A stretch of 64,000 nucleotides of DNA, from the sequence record MH221129.1. The stretch is one strand, 5' to 3'. Of the stretch, positions 10,017 to 58,054 are shown piece by piece. Under the pieces are notes generated by a model. It had not been told where the DNA came from and ran no database searches. It saw nothing but the letters and a program-made list of their open reading frames with translations. Within the stretch, counting starts at the first letter, position 1, and each line of letters opens with the position of its first letter. Position numbers and translations under genes: made by a program.

Positions 10017-10092
10017 TGGCGACTCAGACAGGACTCGAACCTGTGACATATGGATTAACAGTCCACCGTTCTACCAACTGAACTACAGAGTC
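10017..10092 (-). tRNA. tRNA-Asn (GTT)
   Basis: Full cloverleaf, anticodon arm GTGGA-CT-GTT-AA-TCCAT, encoded CCA. Confidence 0.95.
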
Positions 10093-10100
10093 TTAAAGAG

Positions 10101-10176
10101 CGAGCATGTGACAGGATTCGAACCTGCGAGATATCCGATTATGAGTCGGGCGTTAATTCCTCTAACTTCACTGCTC
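10101..10176 (-). tRNA. Degenerate tRNA-Met/Ile2-like (CAT)
   Basis: Good anticodon arm CCCGA-CT-CAT-AA-TCGGA and TTCGAAT T-loop. Acceptor stem is bulged, A at position 8, no CCA. Confidence 0.6.
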
Positions 10177-10177
10177 T

Positions 10178-10284
10178 TGCTTTGACCGGTCTCGAACCGG
10201 CGACCTTCCTCCGCAAGGGTGCTCCACTTTCGTGGATACATTCCCTTTTCTGGAGGGTGCTCTACCTACCTGAGCTACAAAGCC
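10178..10284 (-). tRNA. tRNA-like gene with a 41-nt structured insert replacing the anticodon loop
   Basis: Acceptor GCTTTG/CAAAGC, D-arm GCTC/GAGC, variable loop AGGTC, T-arm GCCGG-TTCGAGA-CCGGT; anticodon loop expanded. Confidence 0.7.
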
Positions 10285-10421
10285 ATTGTACCGTCAACAC
10301 TTGCTGTAGAAGTACCCATCCACAGCAGGGATGTGGGGGAACGCCCAGGCTTCCGCCCAGTCAAGTGAGGTACGAATCTTTCACTTCTGTCATCACTGAT
10401 GGTGACAACGCTCCCATTGTC
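10285..10421 (-). ncRNA. Candidate structured ncRNA between tRNA-Gln and the tRNA-like element
   Basis: Several hairpins, e.g. GACAATG/CGTTGTC and TGCTGTGGA/TCTACAGCA. Confidence 0.35.
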
Positions 10422-10496
10422 TGGCAGTGGCACCTGGATTCGAACCAGGGCATACCGGTATCAAAAACCGGGGCCTTACCGCTTGGCTATACCACT
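10422..10496 (-). tRNA. tRNA-Gln (TTG)
   Basis: Cloverleaf close to enterobacterial tRNA-Gln, CCGGT-TT-TTG-AT-ACCGG, CCA. Confidence 0.95.
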
Positions 10497-10499
10497 AAA

Positions 10500-10576
10500 T
10501 GGTTGTCTCGAGTGGACTTGAACCACCGACCTCCCGCTTATCAGGCGAGCGCTCTAACCAACTGAGCTACGAGACA
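10500..10576 (-). tRNA. tRNA-Ile (GAT)
   Basis: Cloverleaf, CTCGC-CT-GAT-AA-GCGGG, CCA. Confidence 0.95.
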
Positions 10577-10704
10577 TCTGAAAACTGGACCCGATTATTC
10601 CAATGCTGGTTATTCGCATTCGGGTCAACATACGACAATAGGGACTTTAACCCGTCTTCCTCATCCTCGGCTTATCGTGTTCCCGGAGATGTCTTCACAT
10701 AGAG

Positions 10705-10781
10705 TGGCAGGACTGACGGGACTCGAACCCGCGACCTCCGCCGTGACAGGGCGGCGTGAACTCCAACTTCACCACAGTCCT
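10705..10781 (-). tRNA. tRNA-Asp (GTC)
   Basis: Cloverleaf, CCGCC-CT-GTC-AC-GGCGG, CCA. Confidence 0.95.
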
Positions 10782-10785
10782 ACAA

Positions 10786-10866
10786 TGGGTGACACCCCTC
10801 CGAATTGCACGGAGTTCTCAAGGCTGCACAGGCTGAACGATTTACGTACCGCCACTCGGCTTGCCA
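10786..10866 (-). tRNA. Highly degenerate tRNA-like element (possibly His, GTG)
   Basis: T-like arm CTCCG-TGCAATT-CGGAG, loop CT-GTG-CA, ends in CCA; acceptor and anticodon stems imperfect. Confidence 0.35.
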
Positions 10867-10912
10867 GTCTTCATCCGCTGCTCATTGGCTGCAGGAGACA
10901 AGTGTCGTTGTT

Positions 10913-10987
10913 TGGTAGAGCGTACGGGATTTGAACCCGTGTGACAGCCTTGAAAGGGCTGTATCCTTACCGCTAGATGAACGCTCC
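10913..10987 (-). tRNA. tRNA-Glu (TTC)
   Basis: Cloverleaf, CAGCC-CT-TTC-AA-GGCTG, CCA. Confidence 0.95.
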
Positions 10988-10993
10988 GGTAAA

Positions 10994-11078
10994 TGGTGGC
11001 AGGTGAAGGACTCGAACCTACGAAGCCCGAAGGCCACAGATTTACAGTCTGCTCTCGTTGCCGCTTGAGTAACCTGCC
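10994..11078 (-). tRNA. tRNA-Tyr (GTA)
   Basis: Class II cloverleaf with long variable arm, GCAGA-CT-GTA-AA-TCTGT, CCA. Confidence 0.95.
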
Positions 11079-11085
11079 GAATACT

Positions 11086-11280
11086 TTATTCTTCGGGATT
11101 GTCGGTTGGGATGAATTTAATTTTCAAATCGACCAGCTGACCGTCTTCCTGACGAGTCCACTCCAGACTATCCACGCTACATAGGTTAATCCCCATTTGG
11201 TTCGGGATAACATCCAGCGGAAGTGGGGATTCTACTTTGCCGTCAACGATATCGGCGGCAGAAGCTTTGAAGTGTTCCAT
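11086..11280 (-). CDS. Small acidic hypothetical protein (64 aa) inside the tRNA cluster
   Basis: Strong SD GAGGAG, stop 7 nt before tRNA-Tyr. Confidence 0.7.
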   Translation of the reverse strand: MEHFKASAADIVDGKVESPLPLDVIPNQMGINLCSVDSLEWTRQEDGQLVDLKIKFIPTDNPEE

Positions 11281-11299
11281 GTAACTCTCCTCGTAATAG

Positions 11300-11441
11300 G
11301 TGCCGGTGCATCCCGGCTTGTGTACGGCGCACTCAGCTCCCTCGGGCTTATCTACAAGTACACGCTGCCAGGTGCACCGACATATACCACAATAACCTCG
11401 TTAGAAGTCACTCTGGTATTGCTCGTTGCATACTACTGTGG
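11300..11441 (-). ncRNA. Candidate structured RNA (multibranch unit plus long interrupted rod)
   Basis: Nested stems TCGGTGCA/TGCACCGG, CCTGGC/GCCGGG, GTGTAC/GTACAC; second unit closed by CCACAGTA/TATTGTGG. Confidence 0.45.
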
Positions 11442-11511
11442 TTTCACGTAAACGATTTCGCATCGGAATCCGAGTGCATATTAATTATACTAATTAACCC
11501 AAATTAATTTT

Positions 11512-11800
11512 TGAATGAGGGCGATGGACTTCTTCTTCTGAGCCCGGCCGTAAGGTCAGGTCTTAGCGTCTCCAAGCACCGCCCTCTTTCACATAACGCT
11601 GGTAGCGCTCTGGCTACCGGTGGTCGATACCACCCTAACACTGGGAACTCAATCCCATTCGGTCATCCAATTGTATTTTACAGGCGTAGCGAGGCGGCTT
11701 AATGGGCCGGTGCTTGCCTGTCCCCTAGGGACGGTTGTCGTGGAGACGCCAGTCTGTAAGTGGGGCCCTTGCGGGAAAACCCATCGCCTGTAAACCGAAC
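11512..11800 (-). ncRNA. Candidate ~290-nt multidomain ncRNA
   Basis: Three nested long-range helices and several internal hairpins; G-U extensions only on the minus strand. Confidence 0.6.
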
Positions 11801-11889
11801 GTGATTAAAATCCCAGAGTCTAATGCTGGCAATTAAGTCGGCAATAAACCTGAGGATTTCACGCATAATCATTTTCTCGTATCGAATGA

Positions 11890-12080
11890 GTCTATGACCG
11901 GGCAGATACCCAGCATCCTGTACGAGCGACCTGGTGCTTTGTGTATCTGGCTGCTACGGATTTACGGGTATACCGTAGGTCTACGCTGCGTACTGCTGCT
12001 CCCGGCCCATGTGGGACATCAACCCACACAGCCATCAGAAGGTTCACCAGTCATCCACCGTTCCCGTTGCAGCGGGCGCG
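11890..12080 (-). ncRNA. Candidate ~190-nt multibranch ncRNA
   Basis: Closing helix ATGACTGG/CCGGTCAT enclosing TGTGGG/CCCACA, CTACGG/CCGTAG and CAGATAC/GTATCTG stems. Confidence 0.5.
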
Positions 12081-12114
12081 TCAGAATTAGAGGAGGTGGG
12101 CCGAAGCCCACCGT

Positions 12115-12366
12115 TTAGCCTGCACAAAACGACTCATGGACAACACCTGCCGGCAAGTCAGTTCGACCGATACAAGTGACGCTCAGGCGTACGCCGTCAT
12201 CGCAGCCACAAATACACACGTCTTCGTAACACGAGCAGTTGTCAGCCCAATGACCGCTAGAGGGTGGAGTTGCGCGCGCAGCTTTCCGGTTAGGGGCAGC
12301 TACGACTATGGAATCAAACTCATCATAACTCACGCGGTCACGTCGTTCTAACAAATACAAATTCAT
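12115..12366 (-). CDS. Small phage hypothetical protein (83 aa)
   Basis: SD AGGAG; followed by hairpin GGTGGGC-TTCG-GCCCACC. Confidence 0.75.
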   Translation of the reverse strand: MNLYLLERRDRVSYDEFDSIVVAAPNRKAARATPPSSGHWADNCSCYEDVCICGCDDGVRLSVTCIGRTDLPAGVVHESFCAG

Positions 12367-12444
12367 GATATTCTCCTAAGCGAGCGTCTGCGGAGAGCAG
12401 ACAATATTGGCTTTTGGATATATCAAAATCTGTACGGCTAAAAG

Positions 12445-12520
12445 TGGCAGGGGAGACAGGGCTTGAACCTGCAACATTCGGTTTTGGAGACCGACGCTCT
12501 ACCAGTTGAACTACTCCCCC
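12445..12520 (-). tRNA. tRNA-Trp (CCA)
   Basis: Cloverleaf, TCGGT-CT-CCA-AA-ACCGA, CCA end. Confidence 0.95.
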
Positions 12521-52777: not shown

Positions 52778-53320
52778 ATGAGTCTGTTTGGAAAAACTGC
52801 GAAAGAGTTAGTCTATGACTTAATCGTTGCCCAAAACCCAGCCCTCACCACCAAAGGGATTACGATTGATAAACTTCAATTCGGTACCCCGTCAAACATC
52901 ACCGCGCCTGACCCGGATGATGAAAAGTACACGCGTTTGAATACCTCGTTAGATGTGACGGGTATCGTAGCGCAGGGTGCGTTCGGTAAGATTGGCTTAA
53001 ACTATCGCCGTCTTTTCGTAGACCATCTGTTCGAGAACGTGGTCATCTCGGTAGACGGTACAGGTGTAACGAAGGCATCGGAGCTGGTTCCGCTTATCCA
53101 GGCGAAATATAACTGGCTTATCGATGCGTCCGAAATCTACGCCACGGAGTCTATGACCAGTAAAGAGAAACACAACCTACGTTTCAATGGCAGCTCACTG
53201 GCCTGGATTGGTACGCTGGAAGTTTACTTGACTGAAGTTCCGTCGGATGCAGTGGACATCACCAAGCTTATTACAGTAACCGAACTGGACGGTCTGACTT
53301 ACGACGCATCTGCATCGTAA
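52778..53320 (+). CDS. Virion structural protein (180 aa), tail-associated N-terminal domain-like
   Basis: Pattern LI..QNP...L.FG.P...NT...G.....YRRL resembles jumbo-phage tail/baseplate proteins; inference. Confidence 0.6.
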   Translation: MSLFGKTAKELVYDLIVAQNPALTTKGITIDKLQFGTPSNITAPDPDDEKYTRLNTSLDVTGIVAQGAFGKIGLNYRRLFVDHLFENVVISVDGTGVTKASELVPLIQAKYNWLIDASEIYATESMTSKEKHNLRFNGSSLAWIGTLEVYLTEVPSDAVDITKLITVTELDGLTYDASAS

Positions 53321-53334
53321 CAAAAAAAGAAGAA

Positions 53335-53364
53335 CTACGAGTACCCCATTGGGGTACTCGTAGG
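53335..53364. terminator. Bidirectional terminator
   Basis: CTACGAGTACCCC/GGGGTACTCGTAG 13-bp stem between convergent genes. Confidence 0.8.
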
Positions 53365-53373
53365 CTTTTATTT

Positions 53374-53796
53374 TTAGCGTTGGATAATCACTTTCACAAT
53401 ATCTTTTACTGGCGGATAGTACCATAGCACGATACTGTCGGGACCTAAATCTTTAGGGTGCGTCTGACAGTAGGCGATATCGGTACCAAACCGTTCAGAG
53501 AGTCGCATCGCGTTCTCTGAGAATTGACAACCGCCACGCCAGTCGTGCGTATACAGAACCTGCTGCAGGAACTTGACTTTCGCATCGAAGAAGTACAGGT
53601 TATCCACAGGCTGATAGTGAGTTACCGGAATAGGCGTATCGGTAAGGACGAATTCCAGACCGCCGCATTGTGCGGAACGTTCTGCCAGAAACTTCATTTG
53701 CCACGGTAACAGTCCATGGTCTTCCCAGACGGTGTTGTTTACCAGCAGATAGTCAGCAGACTCGTCGTATTCAATCGTGAACAGTTTCTTCGCCAT
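53374..53796 (-). CDS. Hypothetical protein (140 aa)
   Basis: TAATG overlap with upstream gene. Confidence 0.75.
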   Translation of the reverse strand: MAKKLFTIEYDESADYLLVNNTVWEDHGLLPWQMKFLAERSAQCGGLEFVLTDTPIPVTHYQPVDNLYFFDAKVKFLQQVLYTHDWRGGCQFSENAMRLSERFGTDIAYCQTHPKDLGPDSIVLWYYPPVKDIVKVIIQR

Positions 53797-54671
53797 TAAT
53801 CCACCTTTTGCTCGAGTTCGGCAGGCGTCATATCTGCTTCTTTAACGAAGATGCCATCAGCGTTCAGGAAACCTTTACGGTCTTTGATTTCATCCCACGC
53901 CAGAGAGAAACACTGTTCCAGCGTCATATCGTAGGCATTGGCCAGCGCGTCCGCGTATTCGACCATCTGCGCGAAATGACATTCGATCATCACAGCGTCA
54001 CTGTTCTCGAAGCGTTTATACTCGAGTTGCTTAGCAGAGTCGATGCCAGCCTGATCCCAGATATAGTCGACCGCCACAGTAAGATGGAAACGCATCTTGT
54101 GGAACAAATAATGGCTGTTCCCATCAAGCGGATCTTTCGAGCGCGCCTCGGCAACATAACCGTTGATGTCCGTCGAGTCGAACTTAATGAGTTCCATTAA
54201 GTTAACCAGAACGACCATGGCATCGCCAATACCGTCCATGATAAAGCGATGTTTGTTTTTGCTGATACCGGTTGCCGCTTCGCCGTCTTCTTCGTAGAGT
54301 TTGGTAGCCTGGCTGTACCAGACACCGTTATCCAGAATGCCGCGAGCTTTGGACCAACCGATAACGTTGGTAATGCACTGCGAGATAGAGTAGAGTGGAA
54401 CGTAACGAGGGTGTGACGTTGTCCCTTTGAACGTCGCGTTTTTGGTATCGAGATCCAGTTCACAGCTTTCAATGTCTAAGAGACCGCCGTCACGGCGCAC
54501 TTTACCTTCGACACGCACTTTACCAGTTTCGGTATTCTGCGCCATGGAGTAAATCTGTTCGAACTCCAGATTACCACCCAGCGCTTTGATAGCTGGGTTA
54601 ACCTGATACAACAGGTCGTCATTAATAACGATGATGTTGTACGGAATCTGGATAATAAAACGTTCGCCCAT
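53796..54671 (-). CDS. MazG-like all-alpha NTP pyrophosphohydrolase with N-terminal extension
   Basis: W..ARG, KLYEEDGE, DGIGDAMVVL and AWDEIKDRKG motifs. Confidence 0.8.
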   Translation of the reverse strand: MGERFIIQIPYNIIVINDDLLYQVNPAIKALGGNLEFEQIYSMAQNTETGKVRVEGKVRRDGGLLDIESCELDLDTKNATFKGTTSHPRYVPLYSISQCITNVIGWSKARGILDNGVWYSQATKLYEEDGEAATGISKNKHRFIMDGIGDAMVVLVNLMELIKFDSTDINGYVAEARSKDPLDGNSHYLFHKMRFHLTVAVDYIWDQAGIDSAKQLEYKRFENSDAVMIECHFAQMVEYADALANAYDMTLEQCFSLAWDEIKDRKGFLNADGIFVKEADMTPAELEQKVD

Positions 54672-54734
54672 TTTGATAGCTCCTTAAACAAAAAAAATAA
54701 GTAGGGTGTCCATATGGACACCCTAATACGTATT

Positions 54735-54938
54735 TTAAATCTTACAAGCACCGCCGGTGCAGTTGTCGTCGTCTTTAGACGGGTCAACGCCACCATCAAC
54801 AGTTGCTTCTGGATCGAGTCCAGGGAGACTGTCAAGGTTATCGAACATGTCATCTTTCTTGTTCATGTCAACTGCGTGACTCGCGTCGTCTAAAGTTACG
54901 AGCGTTTCTAATTGCCCGCGGCCCAATTCTCCAGCCAT
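54735..54938 (-). CDS. 67-aa acidic peptide ending in an NrdA-like CxxxxC tail
   Basis: SD GAGGG, own terminator; C-terminus PSKDDDNCTGGACKI. Confidence 0.75.
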   Translation of the reverse strand: MAGELGRGQLETLVTLDDASHAVDMNKKDDMFDNLDSLPGLDPEATVDGGVDPSKDDDNCTGGACKI

Positions 54939-54947
54939 ACTTCCCTC

Positions 54948-55427
54948 TTAATTAATCAGGTGAATCACAACGTCTGGCGTCACTACATCGACCAGACTGC
55001 GATAGATTTTATCGTAACTGAACTTGTTGAAGAAGAAACCCGCTTCGTCGACAATAACCAAACCGAATTTCTCGTAGCCGGATATTCCCGCACCGGTTGC
55101 TCTTTTCCAACCTTCCGGTAAGTAGCTACAATGTACAGTCAGCCAACCGATTCCAGCCGCTTTTTCATGGAACTTCTCCACCACTTCGTTTCGCAACGAT
55201 TCATTGTGAACTAAGTAGAGCACGCTACCATGGAACTTTGCTGACATATCAACGGCGTGTGTTGTAACACCTTTCTGGCGTCCTGCACCGTAGCGAATAG
55301 TACGAAATTCGCTCAGTGCAATGTGCGGCATAAAGCCACAATTGCGCGCTTCTTCGGAGTCCAGTTCGATAAGACCCTTAGACAGTTCTTTTACTACGGC
55401 ACGGTAATCAATCCGAGTTATAGACAT
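54948..55427 (-). CDS. Single-domain P-loop-like protein with degenerate Walker A
   Basis: GRQKGVTT and LVIVDEA motifs. Confidence 0.6.
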   Translation of the reverse strand: MSITRIDYRAVVKELSKGLIELDSEEARNCGFMPHIALSEFRTIRYGAGRQKGVTTHAVDMSAKFHGSVLYLVHNESLRNEVVEKFHEKAAGIGWLTVHCSYLPEGWKRATGAGISGYEKFGLVIVDEAGFFFNKFSYDKIYRSLVDVVTPDVVIHLIN

Positions 55428-57019: not shown

Positions 57020-58054
57020 TTAAACTGCAACTGGCGCTTTAATTGGTGGATGGGAATCGTAGCCTTCGATTTCGAAATCTTCGAACTTATAGTCAAAGAT
57101 AGAATCCGGCTTACGCTTAATAACCAATTTCGGCAATGGTTTAGGTTCGCGGCTAAGTTGCAAATCAGCCTGTTCCAGATGGTTGGAATACAGGTGTGTA
57201 TCGCCGCCTGTCCAAACGAAATCACCCGCTACCATGTTGGCCTGTTGCGCGAACATGTGAATCAGTAACGCGTAAGACGCGATGTTAAACGGTACACCCA
57301 GGAACATATCTGCGCTACGCTGGTACAGTTGGCATGAGAGAACGCGTGCTGGTATACCACGGGCGTCGAGTTCAGCTTGCATTAAGGTGTCATTGCCAAT
57401 AATCTTGTTGGTAAACAACGCGCTATTGAAAGTCTCAGGCGTATTAATCTCCATCCAGTTCAAACGCTCATCAACAGTCAACTCGCGAGTATAGAACTGG
57501 AAGAATGCATGACATGGTGCTAAAGCCATATCGTCCAGATCAGCAACATTCCAGGCGGACACGATTATGCGGCGGTTATCCGGATCGTTTTTCAACTGAT
57601 TCATCACGGTGGATATCTGGTCTATTTCTCGAGAGGCACCCCATAACGCACAACCGTTCTCTTTATCCCACGCTTCCATTTGGTGACGATCTTCAAAGCC
57701 CCGTGCGAGCAGCTTTTCATGTTCCGCCCACGGTGCCAGTCTTAAATCGGTCCAGGTACGCCACTGTTTACCGTATACGGGACCCAGGTCACCATTTTCG
57801 TTTGCCCATTCGTCCCAGATGCTGACATTATTGTCTTTCAGGTACTGAATGTTCGTATCGCCCATGAGGAACCACAACAACTCGTGGATAATCGAGCGCA
57901 CGTGGCATTTCTTAGTCGTGACTAAAGGAAAGCCTTCTTGCAGGTTAAAGCGCATCTGACGCCCGAAGACCGACAATGTACCAGTACCGGTACGATCGGC
58001 CTTTACATTACCGTTTTCACGAACGTCACGCAGTAAGTCCAGATATTGTTTCAT
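57020..58054 (-). CDS. thyA: Thymidylate synthase
   Basis: [63 protein letters not shown]. Confidence 0.97.

What the first reader, a model, noticed from the sequence alone, without database searches (positions are those of the whole stretch)
54735..54938. Stand-alone ribonucleotide-reductase C-terminal redox tail as its own gene
Seen: a 67-aa acidic, likely disordered ORF with good SD and its own terminator, ending VDPSKDDDNCTGGACKI. Established: E. coli NrdA ends LVPSIQDDGCESGACKI, and that Cys pair shuttles electrons from thioredoxin/glutaredoxin to the active site. No nrdA body lies adjacent or anywhere in this window, and the gene sits in a nucleotide-metabolism cluster. Inference: a trans-acting electron shuttle that boosts or hijacks host or phage RNR, a thioredoxin decoy, or one piece of a split RNR.
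Basis: partly seen in the sequence, partly recalled or inferred. Interest (0 to 1): 0.72.

Follow-up and report, generated by a model that had tools for sequence, protein, structure and literature searches.

The report
Free-standing ribonucleotide-reductase redox tail peptide
A giant Salmonella phage that has no ribonucleotide reductase of its own encodes a small, floppy, acidic protein whose last residues copy the electron-carrying tail of the host's reductase. The same undescribed small-protein family also sits in Neisseria chromosomes, so it is probably a new way of acting on the cell's supply of DNA building blocks.

Summary
The ORF is real: 54735-54938 (-), 67 aa, pI 4.05. A Shine-Dalgarno fills the 9-nt spacer after the upstream gene, and a strong terminator follows. 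The window is Salmonella jumbo phage SPAsTU (SPN3US-like); the gene is SPN3US gp234.

- **Likeness to NrdA.** A profile of 15 homologues searched against all PDB sequences returns RNR alpha as 14 of its 15 hits (the top 14). All are aligned end-to-end at the extreme C-terminus (E. coli NrdA 747-761, 10/15 identical). One hit is the NrdA 25-mer solved bound to glutaredoxin.
- **Conservation.** Both cysteines, their spacing and the terminal Lys-Ile are kept in 118 of 121 relatives. dN/dS is about 0.19.
- **No phage RNR.** SPAsTU and Erwinia phage Derbicus have no NrdA or NrdB, so "split RNR" and "decayed nrdA" are rejected.
- **Wider family.** It also occurs as 42-59-aa stand-alone genes in Neisseriaceae chromosomes. 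In N. meningitidis it lies inside the isc operon, between iscS and iscU. It is also in an unrelated small phage. All copies are annotated "hypothetical"; no paper was found.
- **Best reading.** A diffusible dithiol/disulfide mimic of the NrdA tail, reduced by host thioredoxin or glutaredoxin and acting in trans on host RNR. Whether it boosts or brakes the enzyme is untested.

The parts
54735..54938 (-). Gene for the 67-aa acidic tail-mimic protein (SPAsTU AWN09118.1; SPN3US gp234 homologue), stop codon included
   Evidence: ORF list and sequence; annotation; 77 phage records by tblastn; PHROGs 38753, 24014 and 14561, all of unknown function; dN/dS about 0.19 on the last 22 codons
54738..54761 (-). 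Last eight codons: the two redox-type cysteines four residues apart, then Lys-Ile and the free C-terminus
   Evidence: By column over 121 relatives, 118 keep Cys at -8 and -3, Gly at -5, Ala (rarely Gly) at -4, Lys at -2 and Ile (rarely Leu) at -1. Aligns to E. coli NrdA 754-761. Invariant residues use all synonymous codons.
54738..54827 (-). Conserved C-terminal 30-residue module; the N-terminal 37 residues vary in length and sequence
   Evidence: Alignments A1-A3. tblastn with these 30 residues finds only this family in 71 phage records.
54939..54947 (-). Shine-Dalgarno (GAGGGAAGT on the coding strand) filling the whole 9-nt spacer after the upstream gene's stop
   Evidence: Read directly
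54692..54725 (-). Intrinsic terminator: 10-bp stem (6 GC), 4-nt loop, T run, 9 nt after the stop codon
   Evidence: sequence
54948..55427 (-). Upstream, translationally coupled neighbour (SPN3US gp233, phrog_2586): a single RecA-like P-loop domain with a degenerate Walker A. It precedes the peptide gene in every phage of this group examined.
   Evidence: Synteny in SPN3US, CR5, Caitlin, Asesino, Machina, Derbicus, Phobos, ChrisDB, pEa_SNUABM phages and L047/L048. Only 19 relatives among 1.84 billion proteins. AF2 pLDDT 76.7. Foldseek best matches are DEAD-box domain 1, RadD and Rad51, TM about 0.5. The Walker lysine is absent in most members.
53796..54671 (-). Context: MazG-like nucleotide pyrophosphohydrolase, downstream beyond the terminator
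   Evidence: phrog_7855, E = 5.9e-128; annotation
57020..58054 (-). Context: thymidylate synthase at the head of the same gene string
   Evidence: Pfam PF00303, E = 5.7e-117

Best explanation
The gene makes a small, intrinsically disordered, acidic protein whose only invariant part is a free-standing copy of the redox-active C-terminal tail of class Ia ribonucleotide reductase alpha (NrdA C754/C759, then Lys-Ile and the carboxyl end). The phage has no RNR, so the peptide works in trans on host components. Proposed mechanism: it is a diffusible dithiol/disulfide relay. Host thioredoxin or glutaredoxin reduces its Cys pair just as it reduces the tethered NrdA tail. The reduced peptide can then enter the NrdA active site in place of, or alongside, the enzyme's own tail and reduce the active-site disulfide. 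This ties host RNR turnover to an abundant phage-made carrier during phage DNA synthesis. Shown: the gene is real and under selection, the mimicry is specific to the NrdA tail, the full Cys pair and the free C-terminus are invariant, the phage lacks RNR, and the peptide is disordered. Inferred: recognition by thioredoxin, glutaredoxin and NrdA, and the direction of the effect (support rather than inhibition).
For: - **Specific mimicry.** The family profile searched against 177,635 PDB sequences returns class Ia RNR alpha as 14 of 15 hits (the top 14; the 15th is an iron-dependent repressor at E = 1.8). The profile's end always aligns on the chain's end (E = 0.029). One hit is 1qfn_B, the 25-residue NrdA C-terminal peptide solved with glutaredoxin, so an isolated tail is a known glutaredoxin ligand.
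- **Shuffle control.** The NrdA tail scores 25.1 bits against the phage-tail profile; 0 of 1000 shuffles reach it.
- **Genome-wide check.** With E. coli or Gilliamella NrdA as tblastn query, the best or only hit in two whole phage genomes is this ORF's tail.
- **Complete redox pair kept.** Both Cys, the 4-residue spacing, Gly, Ala, Lys and the terminal Ile/Leu are kept in 118 of 121 relatives, always at the extreme C-terminus. A binding-only inhibitor would not need both thiols.
- **Selection on the protein.** dN/dS is about 0.19 with dS saturated, and all synonymous codons are used at invariant residues.
- **No phage RNR or redoxin.** SPAsTU and Derbicus have no NrdA or NrdB. No thioredoxin- or glutaredoxin-like ORF was found in SPAsTU.
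- **Setting.** The gene lies in a thymidylate-synthase to MazG gene string, with a strong SD and its own terminator.
- **Disorder.** AF2 pLDDT is 58 with no secondary structure, like the NrdA tail itself.
- **From my own knowledge of the enzyme.** Tail-Cys mutants of E. coli NrdA lose thioredoxin-dependent activity but still work with small dithiols, so the active site accepts electrons from a diffusible dithiol.
Against: - No experiment or expression data were found for gp234.
- A tethered tail has a large local-concentration advantage, so a free copy may add little flux unless it is very abundant.
- The family keeps a second conserved block just upstream of the tail that NrdA lacks (A6 profile against the NrdA tail: -1.1 bits). 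This hints at a further, unknown partner.
- In Neisseria the gene lies in the isc (Fe-S assembly) operon, or at other unrelated loci, never next to nrdAB. That gives no direct support for an RNR role.
- The match to NrdA covers only about 15 residues, and the single-sequence search gave no PDB hit.
Confidence: 0.42

Rival explanations
1. Brake or decoy. The peptide competes with the tethered NrdA tail for thioredoxin or glutaredoxin, or for the active-site channel, and lowers host RNR turnover or ties up host redoxins. This would be a bacterial and phage counterpart of the disordered eukaryotic RNR inhibitors such as Sml1.
For: The mimicry evidence is the same. An isolated C-terminal fragment of a fungal RNR large subunit forms a complex with yeast Rnr1 in trans and inhibits growth (PMC3618301). 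Being small, acidic and disordered fits the Sml1/Spd1 type (own knowledge). In Neisseria the gene lies in the isc operon with no promoter- or terminator-like site of its own on the coding strand, so it would rise under Fe-S or iron stress, when slowing dNTP synthesis is plausible. The extra conserved block upstream of the tail could be an anchoring site.
Against: A phage without RNR gains little from inhibiting the host enzyme unless host-DNA breakdown covers its needs, which was not tested. A redox-competent mimic is a productive competitor, not a blocker. Strict retention of both thiols is not needed for steric inhibition. A reduced peptide is not an electron sink without an oxidant.
Confidence: 0.25
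2. Same donors, different acceptor. The peptide is a thioredoxin- or glutaredoxin-recycled dithiol carrier that serves something other than RNR, for example persulfide or Fe-S chemistry, and uses the NrdA tail only as a handle that the redoxins recognise.
For: In N. meningitidis, N. oralis and N. viridiae the gene lies between iscS and iscU. One chromosomal copy has a thioredoxin-reductase-sized flavoprotein two genes away. Another has an AhpC/redoxin gene nearby. The phages carry two radical-SAM (Fe-S) enzymes. NrdA lacks the conserved upstream block.
Against: Other Neisseriaceae carry the gene at unrelated loci: after mnmG, next to a Na/Pi transporter, and between leuS and glnE. In phages it sits among nucleotide-metabolism genes, far from the radical-SAM genes. 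The only protein known to carry this tail is RNR alpha: among the hits below E = 1 in the PDB search there was nothing else.
Confidence: 0.13
3. RiPP precursor or metal-binding peptide: the Cys pair is modified by a maturase or binds a metal.
For: It is a short peptide with a conserved Cys-containing C-terminus. Radical-SAM genes are present in the phage genomes.
Against: There is no maturase, protease or exporter next to the gene in any context. The radical-SAM genes lie about 58 kb away in SPAsTU and 32 kb away in Derbicus, and are absent near the Neisseria copies. The conserved part is identical in layout to a known redox tail, not to any RiPP core (no Pfam or NCBIfam hit).
Confidence: 0.05
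4. A decaying remnant of a lost phage nrdA, or one piece of a split RNR.
For: The tail probably derives ultimately from an nrdA 3' end.
Against: There is no NrdA or NrdB anywhere in SPAsTU or Derbicus. The N-terminal and central parts show no NrdA likeness. dN/dS is about 0.19. The SD, start and terminator are in place and the gene is conserved across five phage genera plus bacteria. In the 7mdi enzyme, which I recall from memory to be Neisseria's own NrdA, the last 12 residues still match the tail profile (7mdi_A 762-773); its residues were not displayed.
Confidence: 0.02

Closest known systems
C-terminal redox tail of class Ia RNR alpha (E. coli NrdA C754/C759; PDB 1QFN is the 25-residue tail peptide bound to glutaredoxin)
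   Same: Acidic run, then Cys, four residues, Cys, Lys, Ile and the free carboxyl end. 10 of the last 15 residues are identical to E. coli NrdA. Both are disordered. The positions after the first Cys vary in the same way as they do among bacterial NrdA proteins.
   Different: It is not attached to any RNR body: a 67-aa gene of its own in a genome without RNR. It has an additional conserved block upstream of the tail that NrdA lacks.
Sml1 / Spd1 / Hug1 / Dif1: small disordered regulators of eukaryotic RNR (own knowledge)
   Same: Small, disordered, stand-alone proteins that act on the RNR large subunit. Sml1 is reported to compete with the large subunit's own C-terminal Cys-pair domain.
   Different: There is no sequence relationship (no Pfam hit). 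Those proteins do not carry the redox Cys pair and are inhibitors. They are eukaryotic. The direction of effect here is unknown.
C-terminal incompatibility domain of Neurospora UN-24 (RNR large subunit) expressed alone (PMC3618301)
   Same: An isolated C-terminal piece of an RNR large subunit acts in trans on another RNR large subunit.
   Different: That is a 135-aa artificial fragment of a eukaryotic enzyme forming a non-reducible complex. It is not a natural stand-alone gene family.
Phage-encoded redoxins that feed RNR (T4 NrdC, NrdH-type) (own knowledge)
   Same: Phage accessory proteins in the electron path to RNR.
   Different: Those are folded thioredoxin-fold proteins with a CxxC site, usually encoded together with a phage RNR. 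This is the acceptor tail itself, unfolded, in a phage without RNR; no thioredoxin-fold ORF was found.

Membership tests
Class Ia RNR alpha (NrdA) | Ten-stranded catalytic barrel with active-site cysteines (Pfam Ribonuc_red_lgC/lgN, ATP-cone) | tested here: not met
   67 aa, no Pfam family. No NrdA-like sequence elsewhere in the genome.
Class Ia RNR alpha (NrdA) | Extreme C-terminal Cys-x4-Cys redox tail after an acidic stretch | tested here: met
   The profile hits RNR alpha end-to-end. 10 of 15 residues are identical to E. coli NrdA 747-761. 25.1 bits against a maximum of 6.6 for shuffles.
SPN3US gp234 family (PHROGs 38753, 24014, 14561; unnamed small proteins of Neisseriaceae) | Protein of about 40-120 aa ending in the eight-residue Cys-pair tail, preceded by a Gly-Gly-Val-Asp-type block | tested here: met
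   phrog_38753, E = 1.7e-23. 181 clusters with the A3 profile. Tail counts.
Thioredoxin / glutaredoxin / NrdH | Thioredoxin fold with a CxxC active site | tested here: not met
   Spacing is Cys-x4-Cys. AF2 predicts no fold (pLDDT 58). No Pfam or NCBIfam hit.
Sml1-type RNR inhibitors | Sequence family membership | tested here: not met
   No Pfam hit at E <= 0.01
Sml1-type RNR inhibitors | Binds the RNR large subunit and blocks regeneration by its C-terminal domain | not testable with these tools
   Needs binding or structural data
RiPP precursor | Adjacent maturase, protease or transporter genes | tested here: not met
   Neighbourhoods. The radical-SAM genes are 32-58 kb away.
RNR beta (NrdB) C-terminal tail mimic (considered for the central block) | Likeness to the NrdB C-terminal peptide that docks on NrdA | tested here: not met
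   The central-block profile finds no R2 chain in the PDB. It scores 1.0 bit on the E. coli NrdB tail, and 124 of 1000 shuffles score as high.

The most novel reading that the evidence does not exclude
Bacteria (Neisseriaceae, under isc-operon control) and at least two unrelated phage lineages make a diffusible copy of the RNR alpha redox tail. This would be a previously unrecognised class of small proteins that plug into the thioredoxin/glutaredoxin-to-RNR electron path. They would act either as soluble carriers or as the first prokaryotic counterpart of Sml1-type RNR regulators. Through them, RNR-less jumbo phages would take control of host dNTP synthesis.
Probability: 0.4. Interest if true: 0.85.

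Novelty: new variant of a known kind. Interest (0 to 1): 0.72.

Why it matters
RNR is the gate to all DNA synthesis, and its re-reduction by thioredoxin or glutaredoxin through the C-terminal tail is a long-studied step. No free-standing tail has been described. A natural, conserved, 40-70-residue tail peptide would be two things. It would be a ready-made probe for how redoxins and the active site recognise the tail. It would also be a new type of RNR modulator in bacteria and phages. For phage biology, it suggests how giant phages that lack RNR still manage the host's dNTP supply. For Neisseria, including the pathogenic species, it adds an unannotated gene to the isc operon. That gene links Fe-S stress to thiol-redox or nucleotide metabolism.

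Tried and rejected
- **No hits with the single protein.** Pfam, NCBIfam and a single-sequence PDB search gave nothing. Only the family profile exposed the NrdA match.
- **No recent capture from the host.** DNA-level likeness to E. coli genomes: none. So this is not a recent capture of host nrdA.
- **IMG/VR scan.** It returned only SPN3US.
- **NrdB-tail mimic idea.** I suspected that the central acidic block mimics the NrdB C-terminal tail. The suspicion arose because 1rlr_A scored best. Not supported; the 1rlr_A deposited sequence is odd at residues 737-746.
- **Partner gene in Neisseria.** I asked whether the 164-aa gene upstream of the peptide in N. oralis is a homologue of phage gp233. It is not; it looks like a membrane protein.
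- **Larger fusion proteins carrying the module (66-210 aa).** None were found.
- **Phage thioredoxin or glutaredoxin.** Only one annotated ORF has a CxxC-type motif, and it has no Pfam fold.
- **MntS.** A 42-aa E. coli small protein that surfaced in a literature search; unrelated.
- **Literature.** There is no mention of gp234 or gp233 in the SPN3US essential-gene paper. The one paper that holds the word 'gp234' concerns another phage. Searches for tail mimics, for a Neisseria isc small protein and for the tail letters found nothing relevant.
- **Not done: host tracking.** Whether the two variable tail positions track the host was not tested against host NrdA sequences. Phages of the same host (Erwinia amylovora) already differ at those positions.

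Full report
**What is there.** The window is identical to bases 124001-188000 of Salmonella phage SPAsTU (MH221129.1, genus Seoulvirus, an SPN3US-like jumbo phage).
- The ORF at 54735-54938 (-) encodes 67 aa and is annotated 'hypothetical' (AWN09118.1). It is the homologue of SPN3US_0234, gp234.
- It is acidic: pI 4.05, 16 D+E against 5 K+R, with exactly two cysteines.
- A GAGGGA Shine-Dalgarno fills the 9-nt gap after the stop of the upstream gene.
- A 10-bp GC-rich hairpin with a T run follows the stop.

**It is a real gene family.**
- tblastn finds the gene in 77 phage records (Salmonella, Escherichia, Proteus, Cronobacter and Erwinia jumbo phages of at least five genera). It lies directly after a gp233-like gene in every locus examined, usually with MazG downstream and thymidylate synthase upstream.
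- In an alignment of 15 homologues the N-terminal halves differ in length (48-97 aa in total) and sequence. The last 30 residues are conserved. Both Cys, one Gly and the Lys are invariant, and Ala and Ile nearly so.
- Over the last 22 codons dN/dS is about 0.19, with synonymous sites saturated. The invariant Cys, Gly, Ala and Lys use all their synonymous codons. Selection therefore acts on the protein, not on DNA or RNA.

**The likeness to the NrdA tail is specific.**
- The single protein hits nothing in Pfam, NCBIfam or the PDB.
- A profile of the family, searched against all 177,635 distinct PDB sequences, returns 15 hits at E <= 10, and the top 14 are all class Ia RNR alpha. They are E. coli R1 in eleven sequence variants (E = 0.029-0.051), two other RNR alpha chains (7mdi_A, 8vhp_A) and 1qfn_B. 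The 15th hit, at E = 1.8, is an iron-dependent repressor matched outside the tail.
- 1qfn_B is the 25-residue R1 C-terminal peptide solved with glutaredoxin.
- In each of these RNR hits the end of the profile lies on the last residue of the chain.
- As printed by the tool, E. coli NrdA 747-761 is PSIQDDGCESGACKI. The phage has PSKDDDNCTGGACKI, identical at 10 of 15 positions.
- I fetched E. coli nrdA-nrdB-yfaE (L037) through a DNA search. The real NrdA tail scores 25.1 bits on the phage-tail profile, while 1000 shuffles reach at most 6.6.
- With E. coli or Gilliamella NrdA as tblastn query against whole phage genomes, the best or only hit is this ORF's tail.
- The motif occurs once in six frames of 250 kb.

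**The phage has no RNR.**
- The full SPAsTU annotation lists thymidylate synthase, DHFR, thymidylate kinase, MazG and an HD protein, but no RNR.
- tblastn with NrdA, NrdB and YfaE finds nothing else.
- The same holds for Erwinia phage Derbicus, a different genus.
- A motif scan plus Pfam found no thioredoxin- or glutaredoxin-fold ORF in SPAsTU.
- 'Split RNR' is therefore rejected. 'Decayed nrdA' is also rejected: the central conserved block does not resemble NrdA (-1.1 bits; 396 of 1000 shuffles score as high).

**The family reaches beyond these phages.**
- I scanned one genome per bacterial species for the tail pattern. At least 599 stretches matched. The three long matches I inspected are ends of full-length NrdA (Gilliamella, Thalassotalea, Arsukibacterium).
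- Nine of the 12 best-confirmed loci are stand-alone 42-59-aa ORFs in Neisseriaceae: Neisseria, Eikenella, Kingella and Simonsiella.
- These ORFs share with the phage proteins not only the tail but also the block just upstream of it, which NrdA lacks. Phage and bacterial peptides are thus one family, not independent captures.
- In N. meningitidis, N. oralis and N. viridiae the gene sits inside the isc operon, in the order iscR-iscS-[peptide]-iscU-iscA-hscB. No promoter- or terminator-like site of its own lies on the coding strand.
- Elsewhere the gene lies after mnmG, beside a Na/Pi transporter, between leuS and glnE, or near aroE with a thioredoxin-reductase-sized flavoprotein two genes on.
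- A small, unrelated phage contig carries it directly after the portal gene.
- A profile search restricted to small proteins finds 181 clusters. All named ones are 'hypothetical', and 118 of 121 sequences end in the eight-residue tail.
- No larger fusion partner was found.

**Physical nature and neighbour.**
- AF2 with 43 homologues gives pLDDT 58, pTM 0.16 and no secondary structure, so the protein is disordered, like the NrdA tail.
- The upstream gp233-like protein has only 19 relatives in 1.84 billion proteins.
- It folds as a single RecA-like P-loop domain (pLDDT 76.7; DEAD-box domain 1, RadD and Rad51 at TM about 0.5). The Walker A lysine is missing in most members.
- Its role is unknown. 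The Neisseria copies have no such partner.

**How it most likely works.**
- The tail of NrdA is known to take electrons from thioredoxin or glutaredoxin and pass them to the active-site disulfide. The isolated tail peptide is a glutaredoxin ligand (1QFN, listed).
- The free peptide keeps every residue that is invariant in that tail: both thiols, their spacing and the free Lys-Ile end. I therefore take it to be a diffusible dithiol/disulfide relay recognised by the same partners. In a phage without RNR it would act on host NrdAB.
- A pure steric blocker would not need both cysteines. I therefore rank 'auxiliary carrier that ties host RNR to a phage-made electron shuttle' (0.42) above 'brake or decoy' (0.25).
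- The isc-operon location in Neisseria keeps alive a third reading: the same donors but a different acceptor in Fe-S or persulfide chemistry (0.13).
- RiPP or metal-binding readings (0.05) and the remnant reading (0.02) are weak. None of the directions has been tested.

**Comparison with what is known.**
- It is not a member of the NrdA family, because it has no catalytic body. It is not a redoxin, because it has no fold and the wrong Cys spacing. It is not an Sml1-type protein, because there is no sequence relation.
- It works like, or against, the NrdA tail.
- The closest precedents for a trans-acting RNR C-terminal piece are the Neurospora UN-24 fragment (PMC3618301) and, from my own knowledge, competition of Sml1 with the Rnr1 C-terminal domain.
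- I found no paper on gp234, on the Neisseria ORF, or on any stand-alone RNR tail.

- The NrdA match spans only about 15 residues. It rests on a profile E-value of 0.029 plus positional and shuffle controls.
- Absence of RNR was checked in two phages only, and by BLAST and annotation only for the non-class-I RNR types.
- The residues of the NrdA tail in the 7mdi chain were not displayed, only its match (7mdi_A). That 7mdi is N. gonorrhoeae is from my memory.
- Slips: in my reasoning I recalled several short motifs from memory. These were a piece of the NrdA tail, R2 C-terminal peptides (including one of a human virus), and Walker motifs. All letters in this report come from tool outputs.
- My first notebook entry holds a pattern-style summary of the conserved tail. 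I give conservation here by column and counts instead.

Noticed in passing
window 54948-55427 (-): The gene translationally coupled upstream (SPN3US gp233, phrog_2586) is a lone RecA-like P-loop domain. Its Walker A lysine is replaced in most of its 19 known relatives, so it is a probable pseudo-ATPase. It is confined to this phage group and always sits directly before the tail peptide.
   Followed up: partly
L032:5085-5210 (N. meningitidis), L030:2941-3069, L028:2941-3069: An unannotated or 'hypothetical' 42-aa gene of the same family lies between iscS and iscU in the Neisseria isc operon. In N. meningitidis a DNA-uptake-sequence-like GCCGTCTGAA follows its stop. N. oralis also has a 164-aa membrane-like ORF inserted between iscS and the peptide gene.
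   Followed up: partly
SPAsTU record 237039-239274 (outside the window; L009:37039-39271) and Derbicus gp157-158 (L051:32692-34927): A pair of radical-SAM genes is conserved in both jumbo phages (Pfam Radical_SAM, E about 1e-14). Their function is unknown, and they lie 32-58 kb from the peptide gene.
   Followed up: partly
P0006 (Salmonella phage SPFM9_00041) and tblastn hits at about 40-44 kb in records LR535904-LR535913: The gp233 and gp234 residues appear as 20-residue blocks in reversed order, and only 14-21 residues match in those records. This is consistent with 60-base sequence lines placed in reverse order, so it looks like a database artefact rather than biology.
   Followed up: partly
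PDB 1rlr_A, residues 737-746: The deposited R1 sequence differs from E. coli NrdA (L037) over these ten residues, where it reads like the C-terminal peptide of R2. This made 1rlr_A the top hit for the Neisseria peptide and briefly suggested an R2-tail mimicry that tests did not support.
   Followed up: yes
L042:4001-4135 (metagenomic phage contig): A 44-aa member of the family sits directly after the portal gene of a small phage unrelated to the jumbo phages: terminase, 78-aa ORF, portal, peptide.
   Followed up: partly
window 53335-53363, both strands: A perfect 13-bp-stem hairpin with T runs on both sides lies between the convergent genes 52778-53320 (+) and 53374-53796 (-). It is a bidirectional terminator.
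   Followed up: no
L047:7857-9170: In one metagenomic relative the thymidylate synthase gene upstream of the peptide is called as two ORFs (one break). It is a single 344-aa ORF in the sister contig L048.
   Followed up: no
window 10017-12520 (-): The GenBank record lists a cluster of seven tRNA genes here: Asn, Gln, Ile, Asp, Glu, Tyr and Trp. I did not re-check this with the tRNA tool.
   Followed up: no
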